Source of the DNA: Octopus bimaculoides
Taxonomy: Eukaryota
Direction: 5' to 3'
NCBI RefSeq assembly: GCF_001194135.2
Contig: NC_068982.1
Coordinates: 136,079,030 to 136,124,520, forward strand
Length of the DNA: 45,491 bases
Shown here piece after piece: positions 1 through 36,762 of this stretch. Within the stretch, counting starts at the first letter, position 1, and each line of letters opens with the position of its first letter. The position numbers were made by a program, and so were the translations under genes. Below the pieces are notes generated by a model, which worked only from the letters and a program-made list of their open reading frames with translations, was not told the origin of the DNA and searched no databases.

Positions 1-291
1 CCTACACGCCTATTTCACAGCAGTACTCTACCCAAAAAACGAAAACGCAACAACACATACATATAAAACATGGAAGAAAAATAGACAAATACATAACAAA
101 AATACCAGGACTTACAAATATATATAACATACAGAAAATTACACTACTGGGTACTGCACACATTCTACGCAAAACACTTTGAATACAGTAAACATAAGAG
201 CACCACAGCAAACCACAGCACATACCCAAGGCGCACAGAGCTGCGCTCGGTAGTGAAGTGAAAGCACGTTATAAAACTAAAACAACTGAAC
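1..291 (+). mobile_element. Internally deleted R4/Dong-clade non-LTR retrotransposon, copy 1 (5' part cut by the window edge)
   Basis: Bases 1-83 match the Myb-like coding region at 860-941 (LHAYFTAVLYPKNENATTHTYKTWKKN). This joins directly at about 83/84 to the ORF C-terminus (DKYITKIPGLTNIYNIQKITLLGTAHILRKTL) and the 3' UTR shared with 3770-3975. It is followed by (AAT)n. Confidence 0.85.
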
Positions 292-310
292 AATAATAAT
301 AATAATAATA

Positions 311-1139
311 ACACCGGGTACGTTTAAGAGAGGATACAACAGGGATGTTTAACATGTGAGAACGATAAATCACTGCTCCGAAATTTATCCAAAAACATCG
401 GAACTAATGACATCGCATGGAGCCAAAAATAGCTGACAAAGGGTTGGACTATATCCGAGTAAGTAATACTCATTGAAATTTATTTCTATATTCCAAATGA
501 AATGATGTATTTTAACTGGGTATCATCTCAACTGCTCGCACAGCACATGTAAACACGCTTGATACATCAACACCAGACCATCTCCGGCTCCAAACACACT
601 GTACAAAATAAATTACAAATAAATTAAATAATACCGGTATTATTCCACCCAAGAATAACAATCGGGAAGTGCGTACTTTAAACTTGTTACACAAAAAGTA
701 CGAAAAACTACACGTGCAAAACAATTTGACAACAGAAATAAAAGGATCGGTACCTTACAAAAATGATGACCGTCAAAATAAAGGACCGGACATTGTTCCT
801 CATGTCGCGCAAATAAAACCCAAACGGCATAAATGGACAGGTGAGGAATATATTTCAATCCTACACGCTTATTTTACAACAGTGCTCTACCCAAAGATCG
901 AAAACGCAACAACACATGCATATAAAATATAGAAGAAAAATAACCTAAATAAAGACTTCGACATAACAAAAACTCCAGGACTTATAACATACAGAAAATT
1001 GGACTACTGGGCACTGCACACATCCTACGCAAAACACTTTCAATACAGTAACCATAAGAGCATCACAGCAAACCACAGCACATACCCAAGGTACACATAC
1101 CTGCGCTAGGTAGTGAAGCACGTTATAAAAATAAAACTA

Positions 1140-1142
<3 letters not shown>
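311..1142 (+). mobile_element. Internally deleted R4/Dong-clade element, copy 2 (5' region + Myb-like N-terminus fused to 3' end)
   Basis: ORF 669-932 contains KRHKWTGEEYISILHAYF (Myb/SANT-like, as at the N-terminus of R4/Dong ORFs). At about 960-962 it joins to ATAACAAAAACTCCAGG, the ORF C-terminus and the 3' UTR homologous to 3779-3975. (AAT)n lies on both sides. Confidence 0.8.

Positions 1143-1202
<60 letters not shown>
1143..1202. repeat. (AAT)n microsatellite at the 3' end of Dong copy 2
   Basis: Pure AAT run, seen directly. Confidence 0.98.
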
Positions 1203-1204
<2 letters not shown>

Positions 1205-1430
1205 TCATAATTTTAATCCTCTCTATTATAGGCAAAAGGCCCGGAATTTGTGGGAAGATGGATAATTGATTACGTCGACACCAGTACTTGACTGCTACTT
1301 AATGTATCGACCCCGAAAGAATAAAAGCACACTCGAACTCGGCAGCATTTGAAATCAGAACGTAGCGACGGGTGAAATATCTCTAAGCATTTCGTCCAAC
1401 GCGCTAACGATTCTGCCAGCTCATTGCCTT
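1205..1430 (-). mobile_element. tRNA-derived SINE, family C (GAGCTGGCAGAA head)
   Basis: The reverse complement begins AAGGCAATGAGCTGGCAGAATCGTTAGCGCG. It has a B-box-like ATTTCAAATGC and shares its core with the copies at 19881, 25817, 29471 and 36545. Confidence 0.85.
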
Positions 1431-1600
<170 letters not shown>

Positions 1601-1611
1601 AATGATAATAA

Positions 1612-2560
1612 TATAAGATTGAAGCTATCAACACCTGGGTGGTTTCACTCCTTATATATGGAGCATGGGTAATCGCATAGACAGTAGGCAAACTAAACAC
1701 CTTAGACAGAAAGACAAGGAAGCTGCTAACTAGATATGGGACGCTCCACTCAAAAAGTGACACAGACAAACTGTATGTACCAACAAAAAGAGGGGGAAGA
1801 GGACTTATTGGATGCGAACACAGCATTAGAGCAGAAGAAAACAACATAACACAGTATGTAAAAATGCCACAGAACCGCTATTATTAGAAGTAAGAAGGTC
1901 ATGCTTGTGTAGGTTGAAAGATTGCAAAGATAAAGCACTATACAAGAAATTGAAAACGAATGAAACTGAAAATAGGTGGGTAAAGAACAGAATGCATGGA
2001 CAATTTCATAGGGATGTTGAAGATAAGACAGACAGAGAAAAAAGATGGCTGTGGATGACTAGAAGTGATTTAAAACTGGAAATGGAGGCTATAATCTGTG
2101 CTGCCTAAGAGCAAGCATTAAGGACCAGTTACAGATACGGAATAGACAACACACTAGAAAGTAATACATGCAGAATCTGTGGATAAAACGGTGAAACCGT
2201 AGGGCATATTACCAGCCAATGTACGCTACTAGCCCAGAAGGAATATAAGACACGCCACGACAATATAGCAAGGCTAGTCCATTGGATGCTTTGCAACCAG
2301 TATGGTCTTGACACAACAAGTTATGCGATGAGGAAGAAAGAAAAGTCGATAGGTATGAGAGCTTAGCTTGGCAGATAAAGCAGTTGTGGTCGATGAAAAA
2401 GGTGGTAGTGGTACCAATAATTGTCGAAGCCCTGGGATCAGTGAGTAAAAATCTCGAGAAGTACATGGAACAAATAGGGTCTGCAATAAGGGTGAAGCAC
2501 TTGCAGAAAACAGCACTGCTTAGAACCGTTCGAATACTCCGGAAAGTGCTTGAAAACTAA
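1612..2560 (+). pseudogene. 5'-truncated, decayed R4/Dong-clade ORF (second family): RT thumb, CCHC knuckle and partial restriction-like endonuclease
   Basis: Translates as KIEAINTWVVSLLIYGA..LDRKTRKLLTRYGTLHSKSDTDKLYVPTKRGGRGLIGCE..MHGQFHRDV..CRICG*NGETVGHITSQC..YKTRHDNIARLVHW..VVVVPIIVEALG..LLRTVRILRKVLEN*. It has stops and frameshifts, and the PD..D catalytic segment is deleted near 2311. Confidence 0.9.
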
Positions 2561-2700
2561 TCTCCCCCAGAACTACGTTAAGGGTACACGTGTATGTGGA
2601 GTTCTCAGCCACTTGCACGTTAATTTCACGAGCAGGCTGTTCCGCTGATCGGATCAACGGGAACACTCGTCGTCTTACCCGATGGAGTGCCAACAACAAC
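2559..2700 (+). mobile_element. 3' tail of SINE family D, ending in (CAA)3 and fused to the Dong stop codon
   Basis: AATCTCCCCCAGAACTACGTTAAGGGTACACGTG...GATGGAGTGC aligns to the reverse complement of 8448-8575. Confidence 0.85.
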
Positions 2701-2768
2701 CTACCACAGCTGCATGGGATGGAGTACAGGCAATCTTTGGTCATATTCTCTTCTATTGGTGGTTTCAC
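2697..2768 (-). pseudogene. Penelope-like GIY-YIG endonuclease fragment (inverted)
   Basis: The minus strand reads VKPPIEENMTKDCLYSIPCSCGRL, matching the PLE VYxIPCSCG motif that starts the GIY-YIG domain. Confidence 0.7.
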
Positions 2769-3088
2769 TCGTAAATAATGTAAATAATGTACATAATTCC
2801 TCATCTCTTAAATATAGAACTGTATTATCTAATCAGTACGGAGCCGACATTAGACTTCAATGGAGACATATAGAGAAACTCCATCAAAAACTAGCTCGTC
2901 TTACAAACCATCTAACTTTCCTGTGTAGATGTAGAGACTCAAAGCTAATACCACCTGGTTTAAATATAATGGCACCGGTGGATTCATATAAACCTAGAAG
3001 AGTAGCGGAAAGGGCAGGACATACCCTCGTCCGTGAGCGGATCCATTACAACCGTTGGAAAAGACATCAGCCAAATAACGAAATCAAA
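2768..3088 (+). pseudogene. Penelope-like element ORF N-terminal fragment
   Basis: YGADIRLQWRHIEKLHQKLARLTNHLTFLCRCRDSKLIPPGL..RVAERAGHTLVRERI matches the typical PLE N-terminal pattern (NHLxFLxRCxxxxLIPxGL). Confidence 0.8.
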
Positions 3089-3302
3089 GTGAGGATGGGC
3101 TGCTTGATTTGAAGAAAATTCTAGCTGGGCCCCACCTGCAAGGTCATGCGTTGTTTACCTTGATATGAGCTTACTATGTCACGCACATATGGTTGTGATG
3201 CATGTGCCTTGTGCAGTATATTGAGCTTCGTATATTTTACCCCATGTCATTTTGATTGTATACCCTGCTCCCTCACTGAATAATAATAATAATAATAATA
3301 AT

Positions 3303-3972
3303 ATATGTGGAGATCGACAAGAAACAATAAATCATATTATCTCTGGCTGCCCAGTCCTGGCTAAGAAGGAATATATTCACAGACACGACAGAGCTGGGAC
3401 CTATATACACTGGAAGCTATGCCAACATTATGGAATAGCAACAGAAAAAAGATGGTATAAACACACGCCAGAAAAGGTCACAGAAAACGAGAAAGCAACC
3501 ATACTCTGGGATATGCCAATACACACAGATAGAGAAATTAAGGCAAATAGACCAGATATAGTTGTCAAAGATCATGAAGGAAAAAAATGCCTTCTAATTG
3601 ATGTTTCAATACCAGCAGATGACAACGTTTCTCTAAAAGAAATGGAAAAACTTTCAAAATACAAAGACCTGGAAATAGAGATAACTCNNNNNNNNNNNNN
3701 AATGTGGAATCTAAAAACAGAAACAATTCCTATCATAGTAGGTGCCTTAGGTATAATAAAAAAATATTCAGACAAATACATAACAAAAACACCAGGACTT
3801 ACAAATATATATAACATACAGAAAATTGCACTACTGGGTACTGCACACATTCTACGCAAAACACTTTCAATACAGTAAACATAAGAGCACCACAGCAAAC
3901 CACAGCACATACCCAAGGCGCACAGAGCTGCGCTCGGTAGTGAAGTGAAAGCACGTTATAAAAATAAAACTA

Positions 3973-3975
<3 letters not shown>
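3303..3975 (+). mobile_element. 5'-truncated R4/Dong-clade element, family 1 (CCHC knuckle + PD-(D/E)xK endonuclease + 3' UTR)
   Basis: The ORF to 3878 reads ICGDRQETINHIISGC..RHD..ILWDMPIHTDREIKANRPDIVV..CLLIDVSIP..EKLSKY..PIIVGALG..ALLGTAHILRKTLSIQ*. It is flanked by (AAT)n at 3280-3302 and 3976-4035 and contains a small N gap at 3688-3700. Confidence 0.93.
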
Positions 3976-4031
<56 letters not shown>

Positions 4032-4035
4032 TAAT
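3976..4035. repeat. (AAT)n microsatellite at the 3' end of Dong copy 3
   Basis: Seen directly. Confidence 0.97.
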
Positions 4036-4197
4036 ATAGCTGAAAACTACCGATAGCATGGTATCGTAGGCTGGAGGTATCAAGCACGCTACGCATGCGA
4101 GACTCTAGGAGCTCCGATAAAACCTGTGATATAGAGAAGTGTTAATAATGATGTACTATTGCGATTATGCAGATTCAATGCAATATCTATTTAACTT

Positions 4198-4599
4198 ATT
4201 ACTCTTTAAATTGTTTCAGTCATTAGACTGTGGCCATTCTGGAGCACCACCTTTAGTCGAGCATATCGACCTCAGGACTTATTCTATGTAAGCCTAGTAG
4301 TTATTCTATCGCTCTCTTCTGTCGAACCGCTAATTTACGGGGACGTAAACACACCAGCATCGGTTGTCAAGCGATGTTGGTGGGACAAACAGACATACAA
4401 ACTCATACACGCACATACATATATACACATATACATATATACGACGGGCTTCTTTCAGTTTCCGTCTACCAAATCCACTCACAAGGCTTTGATCGGCCCA
4501 AGGCTATAGTAGAAGACACTTACCCAAGGTGCCACTCAGTGGGTCTGAACACGGAACCATGTGGTTGGTAAGCAAGTTACTTACCACACAGCCACTCCT
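4198..4599 (-). mobile_element. tRNA-derived SINE, family A (full length, internal CA/TA tract)
   Basis: Minus-strand head GGAGTGGCTGTGTGG (A-box-like) with a B-box-like GTGTTCAGACCC; collinear with 13681-14092. Confidence 0.92.
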
Positions 4600-18815: not shown

Positions 18816-19880
18816 TAATTGCTTAGAATATACGAGTGGCATTAGAAGAAAAGTAAGATTTTCAATTTATAAATACTTCATCTAAAGTAAAGTTGCCATG
18901 TATATAGCAAAAAAAAAAAAAAAAAAAAAAAAGAAATCATGAAAATACAAAACGAAATCGATGCATAAAATTCTTCAGAAAATATTTAACTCAATCATTT
19001 TCATTCCAGCATCATCAAAAACCCATTTACTTTGCATAATCTATAGAGTCTCTCTGCCTAGTCAAAACTGTCAGCTCTTATAATACTTCTTATAATTCTT
19101 ATAGTCGCGTACATGAAGTTGTTCTGCAATCTGTTTTAAATAAAGGCGCGCATATGCAGTTATTTTGCATAAAGAGGGTGTCATAAACTACCTTCGAAAA
19201 TATGAAAATATCGAAAAAATATCAGGATAACTTTTTGGAAAACAGATAAACAAATATAATTTTATTACAAACATATAAACACTTGTACATGGGCTCCATT
19301 GGTTGCACGCAACCTGCTGAATGAGTCATGTAAAGGTAGATTATGGACATCTTGTTTTTTTGTTATGGTTCATTGCTACGATGTAAAGTAATTATAATAG
19401 AAGTTAGTCCTGTTAATGAATTATAGGTAGGCACGTATTTCATTGATAGTCATTAGCATATATTGGGTGATATAACCATGGTACTTTTTTAAATATATTT
19501 ATTCCAATATTAATGTCGATGACGTTGTTGGAGGGGAAAGTTAGAATGGTGTGGTTTTTACTACGTTCTAGAAGACATTATCTACAAAGTGAAATGATGT
19601 GATCTTGCCCCAGAATTGAAACCACCATACAAGGTCGTCTTATAAGGAGCTCGTATATTATTCTAATTCACTCACCCCGGCTCCTTTAATATCGATTTCT
19701 TCAGACGTAACACAAATGGTTTGGTAAAAATAGGAATATTTCTAATATTAGTCACTTCTCGTGCAATTGCTTCCTCTGGCTCAGTGAGCTCAAACGGTTT
19801 GATTTGATTTCGAATTCTACTGGTTTAAAACTTTTGTTACATGGTCATTCTTTTTGCCAAGCAACATTTTGTATGGAGAA

Positions 19881-20107
19881 GGCGGCGATCTGGCAGAAAT
19901 GTTTAAACGCCGGGCGAAATGCTTAGCGGTTATTTCATCTGCCGCTACGTGCTGAGTTCAAATTCCGCCGAGGTCGACTTTGCCTTTCATCCTTTCGGGG
20001 TCGATTAAATAAATACCAGTTACGCACTGGAAATCGACTTAATCCCTTTGCCTGCCCTTGTTTGTCCCCTCTATGTTTAGACCCCTGTGGGCAATAAAGA
20101 AATAAAT
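19881..20107 (+). mobile_element. tRNA-derived SINE, family B, with 15-bp TSD
   Basis: GGCGGCGATCTGGCAGAA head and GAGTTCAAATTCC B-box; TSD ATTTTGTATGGAGAA at 19866-19880 and 20108-20122. Confidence 0.93.
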
Positions 20108-25658: not shown

Positions 25659-25816
25659 CTCATCAATAAATTTCATAGAAACAGGTAGCCTGGAATGGAA
25701 ACTGAATGACTGAATAATGTAATATTCAATCATGATTGTATATCTAGCTTTGTTGTTAGGTTATATTTTGAATATTTTCTAATTATGTCTTCAACACGTC
25801 AATATTTACATTCAAA

Positions 25817-26050
25817 GGCAGCGGGCTGGCAGAAACGTTAGCACGCCGGTCGAAATACTTAGCGGTATTTCGTCTGCCGTTACGTTCTGAATTCAAATTC
25901 CGCCGAGGTCGACTTTGCTTTTCATCCTTTTGGGGGTCAATTAAATAAGTACCAGTTACGCACTGGGGTCGATATAATCGACTTAATCCGTTTGTCTGTC
26001 CTAGTCTGTCCCCTCTGTGTGTAGCCCCTTGTGGGGAGTAAAGACATAAG
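25817..26050 (+). mobile_element. SINE family B
   Basis: Collinear with 19881-20107 and 29471-29702. Confidence 0.92.
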
Positions 26051-26252
26051 AATGGTTAGCACGATGGGCGAAATGCTTAACGGTATTTCGTCTGTCTTTA
26101 TGTTGTGAGTTCAAATTCCGCCGAGCTCGACTTTGCTTTTCATCATTTCGGGATCGATAAATTAAGTACCCGTTGCGTACTTGGGTCGATCAAATCAAGT
26201 GACCCCACTTCTCCAAACATTTCGGGCCTTGTGCCTAGAGTAGAAAAGAATA
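26051..26252 (+). mobile_element. SINE family C directly after the family B copy
   Basis: Has the same head and core as B but a different 3' tail (..TTTCGGGCCTTGTGCCTAGAGTAGAAAAGAAT); lacks about the first 15 nt. Confidence 0.85.
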
Positions 26253-28406: not shown

Positions 28407-29470
28407 ATTTGTGTGTGTGGGTGAGTGTGAAACGCGTGTGTTTTCAGCATATATGCGTTTGTATATATGTCTATATGTGTATGAGTGTGTGTGTGCGTGC
28501 GTGTGTGCACGTGCGTGTTTGCATGTGCGTGCATGGATGTATGTAGGATAAAAATCGGTTTAATTATGAGTATTACTATGTGCCAATGAGATGCAAGACA
28601 ATATCGTTTGAGTCTCGATAACGATTTGCCTCATTTAACACGTGTATTACCTAAATGACTCTTCTCACTTGAATACAATACAGAATTATGGAGATTGGCA
28701 TTATGTGTCTGCACGTGTTTATTTAGCCACTGACAAAAAGAAAACGTTCATTATATGAATGTCAGGCATATTCTCTTTCAGGTTGCCAGTCTATTTGTAA
28801 TTGGTTTGCTTTGGTTCATGTGTCCTCGAATGACACATAAAACGAACTTTAATATATTGCATTGCACTTGGTTGCAAGTTGAACATTTGACAAATATCGT
28901 AATATTTATAGTGTTTCCTTTCCCTGCGCTCATATAAATTTTGCGTGGTTATTGCAGTTACCTACAAAATGCATAGGTGCGCCGGGTAACTATTTTATCT
29001 ATGATGGTCAATCAACAGCATGTTGCCAAATGTTCCACATGAATATTTTCTTCAGAACAGACTTGAAGAACATTTGTACCTTAAATTAATTATGTGACTT
29101 CTCTAGACTATTTTCTCTATAGGCTAGAGACTAGAATTCTTTCATGTTCCAACTCTATGGAAAAAGCAAGAATATGAGGTCTGCCTAATTCAGTTACATA
29201 CGACATTTTCTAATTCTCAAAACTCAATACTATTCAATACTATTCACGCTGTCTTTCGAGGATCCACGCCAAATTTTGTCAAGACGTTTTAGATGTGAAC
29301 ATTCCGACTGTTTAACATGTTTTGAATATAACACCGCCAATACAATACGACACAAGTGTATTTTGGAAAAAGATATAGTAGTGTGATTTATAGCGTTTAG
29401 ACCATAACGAAGTATATTATTTTCCAATAGAAATAAATTCTATTTGTATCCCTTTAGAAAAAATATGAAA

Positions 29471-29702
29471 GGCGGCGAGCTGGCAGAAAAGCTAGCACGC
29501 CGGGCGAAATGCTTAGCGGTATTTCGTCTGCCGCAACATTCTGAGTTCAAATTCCGCCGAGGTCGACTTTGCCTTTCATCCTTTCGGGGTCGATTAAATA
29601 AGTACCAGTTATGCGCTGGGGTTGATCTAATCGACTTAATCCGTTTGTCTGTCCTTGTTTGTTTCCTCTGTGTGTAGCCCCATTGTGGTCAGTAAAGAAA
29701 TA
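29471..29702 (+). mobile_element. SINE family B with 15-bp TSD
   Basis: TSD AGAAAAAATATGAAA at 29456-29470 and 29703-29717. Confidence 0.93.
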
Positions 29703-36544: not shown

Positions 36545-36762
36545 AAAGCGTTGAGCTGGCAGAATCGTTAGCACACCGGACAAAATGCCTGGTAGCGATT
36601 CGTTCGACATTACGTTCTGACTTCAAATAGCGCCGAGGTCGACTTTGCGGTTCATCTTTTCTCGGTAGATAAAAGAAGTACCACCGGAACACTAGGGCCG
36701 ATATAATTGACTTACTCCCTCCCAGTAATTGCTGGCTTTGTGCTAAAGTTTGAAACCAAATT
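36545..36762 (+). mobile_element. SINE family C
   Basis: GAGCTGGCAGAATCGTTAGCAC head, GAGGTCGACTTTGC core and ..GCTGGCTTTGTGCTAAAGTTTGAAAC tail. Confidence 0.85.

What the first reader, a model, noticed from the sequence alone, without database searches (positions are those of the whole stretch)
1..1202. Tandem non-autonomous Dong/R4 derivatives: Myb N-terminus fused to the 3' end with two different breakpoints (SIDE-like family)
Seen: two adjacent copies both jump from the Myb-like N-terminal coding region straight to the last 25-30 codons and the 3' UTR, removing RT, the CCHC knuckle and the endonuclease. The breakpoints differ: copy 1 is GAAGAAAAATA|GACAAATACATAAC (about 83/84), and copy 2 is GAAGAAAAATAACCTAAATAAAGACTTCGAC|ATAAC (about 962, AC microhomology). 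Known: R2 gives rise to short internally deleted elements (SIDEs) that keep the 5' and 3' RNA signals. Inference: this is an R4/Dong SIDE-like parasite family, with deletions recurring in the same narrow windows that mark the minimal RNA needed for trans-mobilisation into (TAA)n. I am not aware of this being described in cephalopods.
Basis: partly seen in the sequence, partly recalled or inferred. Interest (0 to 1): 0.75.

Follow-up and report, generated by a model that had tools for sequence, protein, structure and literature searches.

The report
Two internally deleted octopus Dong-type retrotransposons
Two neighbouring copies of an octopus jumping gene that inserts into (TAA)n repeats have each lost their whole enzyme-coding middle, at slightly different cut points; this is a known kind of parasite-of-a-parasite, and I could not test whether they have multiplied as a family.

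Summary
Window 1-311 (copy 1, cut by the window edge) and 312-1211 (copy 2) each join the 5' part of a (TAA)n-specific, restriction-like-endonuclease LINE (Dong-type) directly to its last 32-35 codons, 3' UTR and (TAA)n tail. RT, CCHC knuckle and endonuclease are absent.

The junctions are at 83|84 and 962|963 and are really different. Copy 2 keeps 21 nt of N-terminal coding sequence that copy 1 lacks, and these match independent longer copies from public contigs. Copy 1 keeps GACAAAT of the 3' parent (copy 3 at 3304-4036 and contig L010), which copy 2 lacks. Microhomology is only 1-2 nt, and there are no splice signals.

These are bipartite, internally deleted Dong-type elements from two separate junction events. 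"Myb" is unverified, and no 5' ribozyme was found.

The two cut points lie 20 nt and 9 nt apart. Sequence homology, RNA complementarity and splicing did not explain this.

Verdict: a new member of a known kind, of modest interest.

The parts
1..83 (+). Copy 1, 5' segment: N-terminal coding remnant (...LHAYFTAVLYPKNENATTHTYKTWKKN). Its upstream part is cut off by the window edge.
   Evidence: 89.2% identical to copy 2 860-942. blastn to L002, L003 and L004 N-terminal regions. tblastn with P0122, P0132 and P0127.
82..86 (+). Copy 1 deletion junction (83|84): ...GAAGAAAAATA|GACAAATAC.... It has 1-2 nt of microhomology (A, or AG if the parent was L004-like) and is out of frame.
84..291 (+). Copy 1, 3' segment: last 35 codons (DKYITKIPGL...RKTL, stop at 189-191) plus the 3' UTR (192-291).
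   Evidence: 97.4% identical to copy 3 and 96.4% to L010. All differences from copy 3 are private to copy 1.
292..311 (+). (AAT)6AA: tail of copy 1 and target sequence immediately 5' of copy 2.
312..611 (+). Copy 2, 5' UTR. It reaches the family's 5' terminus to within about 30-45 nt.
   Evidence: Aligned with L003 and L006, which also start directly after a trinucleotide microsatellite. No Rfam family, including HDV-like ribozymes, was matched.
612..962 (+). Copy 2, N-terminal coding remnant of about 117 codons. The start codon is lost and there is an in-frame TAG at 930-932. Positions 942-962 (AACCTAAATAAAGACTTCGAC) are N-terminal codons that copy 1 lacks.
   Evidence: phmmer found 13 relatives, best E=4e-19. 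The 21 nt match L003 and L004 at 17/21 each.
961..964 (+). Copy 2 deletion junction (962|963): ...GACTTCGAC|ATAAC.... AC is shared with the 3' parent (TAC|ATAAC), and the fusion is in frame.
963..1142 (+). Copy 2, 3' segment: last 32 codons (ITKTPGL..., 10-nt deletion after 983, stop at 1049-1051) plus the 3' UTR (1052-1142, 6-nt deletion).
   Evidence: 93.9% identical to copy 3 with two gaps.
1143..1211 (+). (AAT)23 tail of copy 2.
   Evidence: TRF.
3304..4036 (+). Copy 3, used as the reference for the 3' parent. It is a 5'-truncated Dong-type element with a CCHC + PD..D..K endonuclease ORF (3304-3878; N gap at 3689-3701), a 3' UTR (3879-3975) and an (AAT)20 tail (3976-4036). It is inserted in the (AAT)8 at 3279-3303.
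   Evidence: It is 96% identical over 704 nt to public contig L010.

Best explanation
Copies 1 and 2 are bipartite, non-coding derivatives of an octopus Dong-type LINE. This LINE has a single ORF with RT, a CCHC knuckle and a restriction-like endonuclease, and it integrates into (TAA)n.

Each derivative consists of three pieces. The first is the element's own 5' end: about 300 nt of 5' UTR plus the first 110-117 codons. The second is the last 32-35 codons. The third is the roughly 95-nt 3' UTR followed by a (TAA)n tail.

Shown here: they arose by two separate junction-forming events, at different times, from the same subfamily. Copy 2 is about 6% diverged from the 3' consensus and copy 1 about 2.6%. 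The joints carry only 1-2 nt of microhomology.

Inferred, not shown:
- The joints were made by a template switch of the reverse transcriptase, or by non-homologous repair.
- The deleted RNAs keep whatever drives transcription at the 5' end and the 3' element that the Dong protein binds.
- They were therefore copied into (TAA)n by target-primed reverse transcription, using protein supplied in trans by autonomous Dong elements. That would make them SIDE-like / bipartite non-autonomous LINEs.
- They sit head to tail because every insertion regenerates a (TAA)n target, producing a nest that also holds two other Dong-type fragments.
For: Structure and homology of both halves.

The two junctions are independent.
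- Copy 2's extra 21 nt match the N-terminal codons of L003 and L004 at 17/21.
- Copy 1's GACAAATAC is identical to copy 3 and L010.

Dong-type nature.
- All three 3' ends finish in (TAA)n.
- Related N-terminus-bearing copies L007, L008 and L009 start right after (TAA)n.
- A C-terminal profile hits solved R2 proteins at E=2e-5.
- (TAA)n is the published Dong target (PMC3812793).
- A full-ORF Dong is reported in the O. bimaculoides repeat library (PMC9115989).

Copy 2 keeps the authentic 5' terminus and abuts (TAA)n, as expected for a complete TPRT copy of a short RNA.

A potential partner is nearby. Copy 3 and L010 have a near-identical 3' end (97-99%) and an open endonuclease ORF.

Both elements in the window that retain a 5' part are deleted in the same way. 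This is not expected if such deletions were rare random accidents.

There is precedent for repeated independent origin of SIDEs from one LINE with variable but clustered breakpoints: Persaeus/Zenon (PMC6740152).
Against: - No second copy of either junction was found anywhere. A search with a reconstructed copy-2-type in-frame fusion protein found only a C-terminal fragment.
- Eight independent N-terminus-bearing loci from related public data all continue into the interior, and none has the junction.
- Two different junctions in two neighbours is what one-off events would give. A propagating family would be expected to share one junction.
- Dong showed no sign of recent activity in O. bimaculoides by MELT (PMC9115989).
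- No ribozyme or other known RNA element was found in the 5' part.
- The 3' part folds only weakly (z=-1.8) and shows no covariation.
Confidence: 0.5

Rival explanations
1. The two copies are sporadic one-offs. Each would be a single dead-on-arrival product of an aberrant reverse transcription (an intramolecular template jump), or a full-length insertion that later suffered a genomic deletion. Neither was ever transcribed and copied again. The similar architecture would reflect a mechanical hot spot in the Dong RNA or DNA.
For: - There are two different junctions rather than one shared junction.
- No other copy of either junction exists in any searchable data.
- All related N-terminus-bearing loci are of the undeleted type.
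- Another related copy (L007/L008) has its own internal deletion starting about 35 nt after the same WKKNN codons. The second Dong-like element in the window (1600-2560) has lost its endonuclease core. Internal deletions are therefore common in these elements.
Against: - Random deletions would almost never fall within 20 nt and 9 nt of each other in an element of several kilobases.
- The hot spot this rival needs was not found. There is no local homology, no flank complementarity and no splice signals.
- Both elements in the window that retain a 5' part are of this type.
Confidence: 0.38
2. The copies are hybrid elements. The 5' part would come from a different LINE family than the 3' Dong part, as in the R2/R1 hybrid SIDEs, rather than from an internal deletion of one element.
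For:
- The C-terminus has relatives across phyla at 55-68% identity, whereas the N-terminus has only octopus-like relatives.
- Pfam did not recognise the RT-like stretch of L009.
Against: - N-terminus-bearing elements use the same (TAA)n target (L007-L009).
- The same 5' and 3' partners were joined twice independently, which is simplest if they lie on one RNA.
- L009 runs from the N-terminus into YxDD-type motifs when read by eye.
Confidence: 0.05
3. There was a single deletion event, and one junction was remodelled later by an 11-nt indel plus a 4-nt substitution cluster or a recombination. On this view the two breakpoints are not independent.
For: - The breakpoints are very close to each other.
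- Both parents contain AGAC, so a joint ...AAATAAAGAC|AAATAC... could have been ancestral.
Against: - It needs four adjacent changes (TTCG/AAAT) that happen to reproduce one parent or the other.
- Background divergence is 3-6%.
- Copies 1 and 2 share no derived state against copy 3 in the 3' part.
Confidence: 0.04
4. The junctions are an assembly artefact: chimeric joins made inside a repeat-rich, gapped scaffold.
For: - The scaffold has an N gap at 3689-3701.
- The region is a nest of similar repeats.
Against: - The two sides of each joint share at most 7 nt (AAAAATA) or 2 nt (AC), far below any assembler word length.
- The copies differ from each other by 3-11%, so they are not collapsed reads of one element.
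- Both copies have proper (TAA)n ends.
Confidence: 0.03

Closest known systems
R2 SIDEs (short internally deleted elements) of Drosophila (Eickbush & Eickbush 2012, PMC3414825)
   Same: - The parent is an RLE-type, target-specific LINE.
- The 5' end is joined to the 3' end and the whole ORF interior is lost.
- They are presumed to depend on the parent's protein recognising the 3' end.
- Independent origins are documented (five SIDEs from four events).
   Different: - R2 SIDEs keep a 5' HDV-like ribozyme and rely on 28S co-transcription. No ribozyme was detected here, and the target is a (TAA)n microsatellite.
- R2 SIDEs were shown to be multi-copy with TPRT-type 5' junction variation. That is untested here.
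- About 110-117 N-terminal codons are retained here.
Persaeus, a SIDE derived from the CR1 element Zenon in Lepidoptera (PMC6740152)
   Same: - Homology to the parent LINE is at the 5' and 3' ends.
[quoted passage not shown]
- Breakpoints vary between SIDEs but cluster in one region, flanked by short microhomologies.
   Different: - It belongs to the CR1 clade (APE endonuclease) and is not target-specific.
- It has a variable central region.
- Its copy number and co-amplification with the partner are demonstrated.
Bipartite non-autonomous LINEs in general: RIME/ingi, NARTc/L1Tc, Vingi-1_EE derivatives, Bov-A (reviewed in PMC5786205)
   Same: They have only the 5' and 3' parts of the autonomous LINE, were created by internal deletion, and have no ORF1-type protein.
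   Different: They belong to different clades and hosts, and their family status is established. Here only two copies are known, each with its own joint.
Dong elements of Bombyx, Anopheles and the snail Biomphalaria, and the Dong consensus of Octopus bimaculoides (PMC3812793, PMC9115989)
   Same: - They insert into (TAA)n.
- They have a C-terminal CCHC + restriction-like endonuclease.
- Copy 3 and L010 represent this autonomous type.
   Different: Those are autonomous elements. Copies 1 and 2 lack RT, CCHC and endonuclease. RT-based placement in the R4/Dong clade was not done here.

Membership tests
Dong/R4-type LINE (RLE-bearing, (TAA)n-specific) | A C-terminal CCHC zinc knuckle followed by a PD..(D/E)xK restriction-like endonuclease. 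| tested here: met
   This applies to copy 3, the parent type, not to copies 1 and 2. Its ORF 3304-3878 reads C..C...H...C and RPDIVV..D..K. It has 557 relatives. A profile of these hits R2 proteins 9nl3 and 9dou at E=2e-5 and 5e-5. zf-RVT hits are weak.
Dong/R4-type LINE (RLE-bearing, (TAA)n-specific) | Integration into (TAA)n, with (TAA)n at the 3' junction. | tested here: met
   Copies 1, 2 and 3 all end in (AAT)n. Copies 2 and 3 are also preceded by it. Related copies L007-L009 start after (TAA)n. The published Dong target is (TAA)n.
Dong/R4-type LINE (RLE-bearing, (TAA)n-specific) | RT domain that places phylogenetically in the R4/Dong clade. | not tested
   There is no RT in copies 1-3. 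L009 shows YxDD-like motifs by eye, but Pfam does not detect them. No reference RT was available.
SIDE / bipartite non-autonomous LINE | The 5' end and 3' end of the autonomous element are joined and the coding interior is missing. | tested here: met
SIDE / bipartite non-autonomous LINE | Several genomic copies share the same junction but have independent flanks, showing propagation in the deleted form. | not testable with these tools
There is no octopus DNA in the scanned collections. Protein-level searches and exact look-ups were negative.
SIDE / bipartite non-autonomous LINE | A coexisting autonomous partner with a matching 3' end. | tested here: inconclusive
   Copy 3 and L010 share 96-99% of the 3' end with copy 1 and 93-94% with copy 2, and have an open C-terminal ORF. 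No full-length copy was seen here. A full-ORF consensus is reported for O. bimaculoides.
R2-type SIDE in the strict sense | A 5' self-cleaving (HDV-like) ribozyme that releases the RNA from a co-transcript. | tested here: not met
   Rfam cmscan of 1-4300 at E<=5 found no ribozyme family. A divergent ribozyme cannot be excluded.
   Pfam gave no hit for the window ORF, P0122, P0127 or P0132. There was no PDB sequence hit. The AF2 model has helices in the right places but mean pLDDT is 53. The W-x2-EE...Y...W...LAN.RR.I pattern is only suggestive.

The most novel reading that the evidence does not exclude
Octopus Dong repeatedly spawns minimal replicons at one fixed pair of positions. The roughly 650-nt 5' module and the roughly 190-nt 3' module, which reaches 32-35 codons into the ORF, would then delimit the cis-acting RNA that suffices for transcription and for (TAA)n-targeted TPRT in trans. 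That would be a natural map of the minimal template for a microsatellite-specific RLE retrotransposon. Several independent SIDE lineages would coexist in one genome.
Probability: 0.25. Interest if true: 0.55.

Novelty: new member of a known kind. Interest (0 to 1): 0.35.

Why it matters
Internally deleted, non-autonomous derivatives of non-LTR elements are considered rare (PMC3414825, PMC6740152). My searches found none reported for the Dong/R4 lineage or for cephalopods.

If the two forms prove to be multi-copy, they would show that a Dong-type protein acts in trans on RNAs that carry its 3' end. They would also bracket the cis-elements needed for site-specific insertion into (TAA)n. This is relevant to understanding RLE-type retrotransposons, which are being developed as insertion tools.

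If they are one-offs, the finding is an ordinary example of LINE decay. Its only curious feature would be the near-coincidence of the breakpoints.

Tried and rejected

**Searches for more copies, all negative**
1. DNA scans found nothing. I scanned for the copy 1 junction in JGI metagenomes. I scanned for a conserved 38-mer of the Dong 3' end in JGI metagenomes, IMG/VR and GTDB genomes. These collections hold no octopus DNA.
2. Exact look-ups of 11 window ORFs, some of them junction-spanning, found nothing on record.
3. A word-indexed protein search with the repaired copy-2 fusion found only a C-terminal fragment. A search with an N-terminal profile found no new members.

**Explanations for the coincident breakpoints, none supported**
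4. Homology patch. The local alignment score between the 5' and 3' breakpoint regions is no better than shuffles.
5. Stem across the deleted interior. Duplex energies of the deleted flanks lie within the shuffles. The 5' flanks came only from related-species contigs.
6. Splicing. There is no GT...AG at either joint.

**Other tests**
7. No 5' ribozyme or other Rfam family was found.
8. The Myb assignment was not confirmed by Pfam, by PDB sequence search or by AF2. I skipped fold search because the model is low-confidence.
9. The SINE-like element at 1203-1431 could have been a Dong-mobilised SINE with a (TAA)n tail. I rejected this: it is a tRNA-derived SINE in reverse orientation, and its other five copies in the window have no (TAA)n.
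10. A Holothuria relative (L001), fetched in the hope of a full-length element, is 5'-truncated.

Full report
**What is there.** The first 4 kb of the window is a nest of Dong-type retrotransposon pieces, laid head to tail between (TAA)n runs.

| Element | Coordinates | Content |
|---|---|---|
| Copy 1 | 1-291, tail (AAT)6AA 292-311 | 5' side cut by the window edge |
| Copy 2 | 312-1142, tail (AAT)23 1143-1211 | retains the 5' terminus |
| SINE | 1203-1431 | unrelated, tRNA-derived, reverse orientation |
| Microsatellites | 1432-1599 | (ATA)42(AAG)14 |
| Element B | about 1600-2560, then sequence running to (AAT)8 at 3279-3303 | second, more distant Dong-like fragment |
| Copy 3 | 3304-3975, tail (AAT)20 3976-4036 | 5'-truncated, still encodes CCHC knuckle and PD..D..K endonuclease |

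tblastn with N-terminal and C-terminal relatives finds no other Dong-type coding sequence in the 45 kb. A UniRef fragment from Octopus bimaculoides (P0001) closely resembles copy 3. A Logan contig (L010) is 96% identical to copy 3 over 704 nt. The source is therefore an octopus.

**Checking the observation.** Copy 1 and copy 2 align over 1-311 and 860-1165 at 83%.
- Copy 1 from position 83 onward is 97.4% identical to the end of copy 3. Copy 2 from 961 is 89% identical, or 93.9% over gap-free columns.
- Upstream of those points both copies carry a different shared sequence, 89.2% identical over 83 nt. In copy 2 this sequence extends back to 312.
- Each copy therefore jumps from an upstream module straight into the last 35 (copy 1) or 32 (copy 2) codons of the Dong ORF, then the 3' UTR.

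**The upstream module is the 5' end of a longer element.**
- *Protein relatives.* An exhaustive HMMER search with copy 2's ORF (612-929) found 13 short relatives, best E=4e-19.
- *Continuation past the joint.* Their contigs are L002 from an ENA metagenome and L003-L009 and L011-L014 from one sequencing project. They align to copy 2 from about position 330-420 up to the junction. They then continue with sequence that copies 1 and 2 lack...WKKN(S/N)L(D/N)KD(L/F)D...NPNKLANIRRYI..., followed by more than 1 kb of interior.
- *Link to an RT.* L009 runs on to YxDD-type motifs when read by eye. Pfam does not recognise this decayed stretch.
- *Insertion target.* L007, L008 and L009 begin directly after (TAA)n.
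- *5' terminus.* Copy 2, L003 and L006 each begin within about 30-45 nt of the same 5' sequence, right after a trinucleotide microsatellite. Copy 2 therefore keeps the element's true 5' end.

There is no Pfam hit and no PDB sequence hit. The AlphaFold model is helical but low-confidence, with mean pLDDT 53.

**The downstream module is the Dong 3' end.** Copy 3's ORF has 557 relatives. A profile of them hits solved R2 retrotransposon proteins at E=2e-5. Together with the (TAA)n target, which is the published Dong target (PMC3812793), this places the parent among RLE-type, Dong-like LINEs. A full-ORF Dong is reported in the O. bimaculoides repeat library (PMC9115989).

**The two joints are independent.**
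- *What copy 2 alone keeps.* It has 21 nt (942-962) that match N-terminal codons of L003 and L004 at 17/21 each. Copy 1 lacks them.
- *What copy 1 alone keeps.* It has GACAAAT, identical to copy 3 and L010. Copy 2 has the N-terminal GACTTCG in that place.
- *Why one is not derived from the other.* That would need an 11-nt indel plus four adjacent substitutions that happen to recreate a parental sequence. Background divergence is only 3-6%.
- *No shared lineage.* In the 3' part, every difference between copies 1 and 3 is private to copy 1. Copies 1 and 2 share no derived state.
- *Conclusion.* Both derive from essentially the same subfamily at different times. Copy 2 is older, having lost its start codon, gained a TAG and suffered two small deletions. 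Copy 1 is younger.
- *Nature of the joints.* They have 1-2 nt of microhomology and no GT...AG, so splicing is excluded.
- *Misassembly.* The shared words at the joints are 7 nt or less, which makes an assembler chimera unlikely. I could not check reads.

**Why the cut points fall in nearly the same place is unexplained.** The cut points are 20 nt apart on the 5' side and 9 nt apart on the 3' side of an element several kilobases long. Three tests for a cause were negative.
- Local homology between the two regions is no better than shuffles.
- Complementarity of the deleted flanks, which could form a stem for the RT to jump across, lies within shuffles. The 5' flanks were available only from related-species contigs.
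- There are no splice signals.

Two readings remain: an unseen mechanical hot spot, or selection for the shortest RNA that still works. A related copy (L007/L008) has its own deletion starting about 35 nt after the same codons. Element B has lost its endonuclease core. Internal deletions are therefore frequent in these elements.

**Family or accidents?** This is the crux, and I could not settle it.
- The scannable DNA collections hold no octopus sequence.
- Exact look-ups of window ORFs and three protein searches found no second copy of either joint.
- All eight related-species loci that carry the N-terminus are of the undeleted type.

For a SIDE-like reading:
- Both elements in the window that retain a 5' part are of the deleted type.
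- Copy 2 is a complete copy, from 5' terminus to tail, flanked by (TAA)n.
- A 97-99% identical 3' end sits on an element with an open endonuclease ORF.
- Persaeus/Zenon shows that one LINE can spawn SIDEs repeatedly with clustered, microhomology-flanked breakpoints (PMC6740152).

Against it:
- There are two joints rather than one.
- No recent Dong activity was detected in O. bimaculoides (PMC9115989).

I put the trans-mobilised, non-autonomous reading at about 0.5 and sporadic one-offs at just under 0.4.

**Comparison with what is known.** The architecture is that of R2 SIDEs (PMC3414825) and of bipartite non-autonomous LINEs in general, such as RIME, NARTc and Vingi derivatives (PMC5786205). 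It is not an R2-type SIDE in the strict sense, because no 5' ribozyme was found. The 3' module shows only a weak fold (z=-1.8) and no covariation among four sequences. My literature searches found no description of such derivatives for Dong/R4 or for cephalopods.

**Verdict.** The functional part (a family, trans-mobilisation, a minimal RNA) is plausible but untested. I rate it a new member of a known kind, with modest interest. A junction count in the genome would settle it.

Noticed in passing
window 1600-3303: Element B is a second, more distant Dong-like fragment, 35-42% identical in protein to copy-3 relatives. It is 5'-truncated after (ATA)42(AAG)14. It has lost about 64 codons that cover the endonuclease catalytic core. 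About 720 nt of unassigned sequence follow, up to the (AAT)8 into which copy 3 inserted.
   Followed up: partly
window 1203-1431; also 26049-26252, 25814-25979, 29468-29632, 19879-20044, 36552-36683: This is a tRNA-derived octopus SINE. The copy in the nest lies in reverse orientation between two (TAA)n runs. The other five copies (73-77% identity) have no (TAA)n, so the association with Dong targets here is incidental.
   Followed up: yes
window 3689-3701: There is a run of 13 N (a scaffold gap) inside the endonuclease ORF of copy 3. The assembly is therefore gapped in this repeat nest.
   Followed up: no
copy 3 ORF 3304-3878 versus proteins P0004-P0121: The C-terminal 190 residues are 55-68% identical to proteins from sea anemones, corals, a sea cucumber and a tunicate. 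The N-terminal region has relatives only in octopus-like data. This points either to unusually strong constraint on the C-terminus or to horizontal spread of the lineage.
   Followed up: no
L007 and L008 (Logan contigs), about positions 322-370: A related-species copy starts after (TAA)n. It carries its own internal deletion of about 650-700 nt, beginning roughly 35 nt after the WKKNN codons. That is close to the 5' breakpoints of copies 1 and 2.
   Followed up: partly
L001 9722-10900 (Holothuria leucospilota CM055978.1): A 5'-truncated relative of the same C-terminal family sits right after a long trinucleotide run (read as poly-Val / poly-Cys-Ser in two frames). About 130 nt after its stop codon there is a short (AAT)4. 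This hints at similar microsatellite targeting in an echinoderm.
   Followed up: no
L009 about 1560-1850: Two YxDD-like stretches (YRDDL.LNA and YMNDLKLYA) lie about 150 nt apart. This suggests an internal duplication or a second nested copy in that contig.
   Followed up: no
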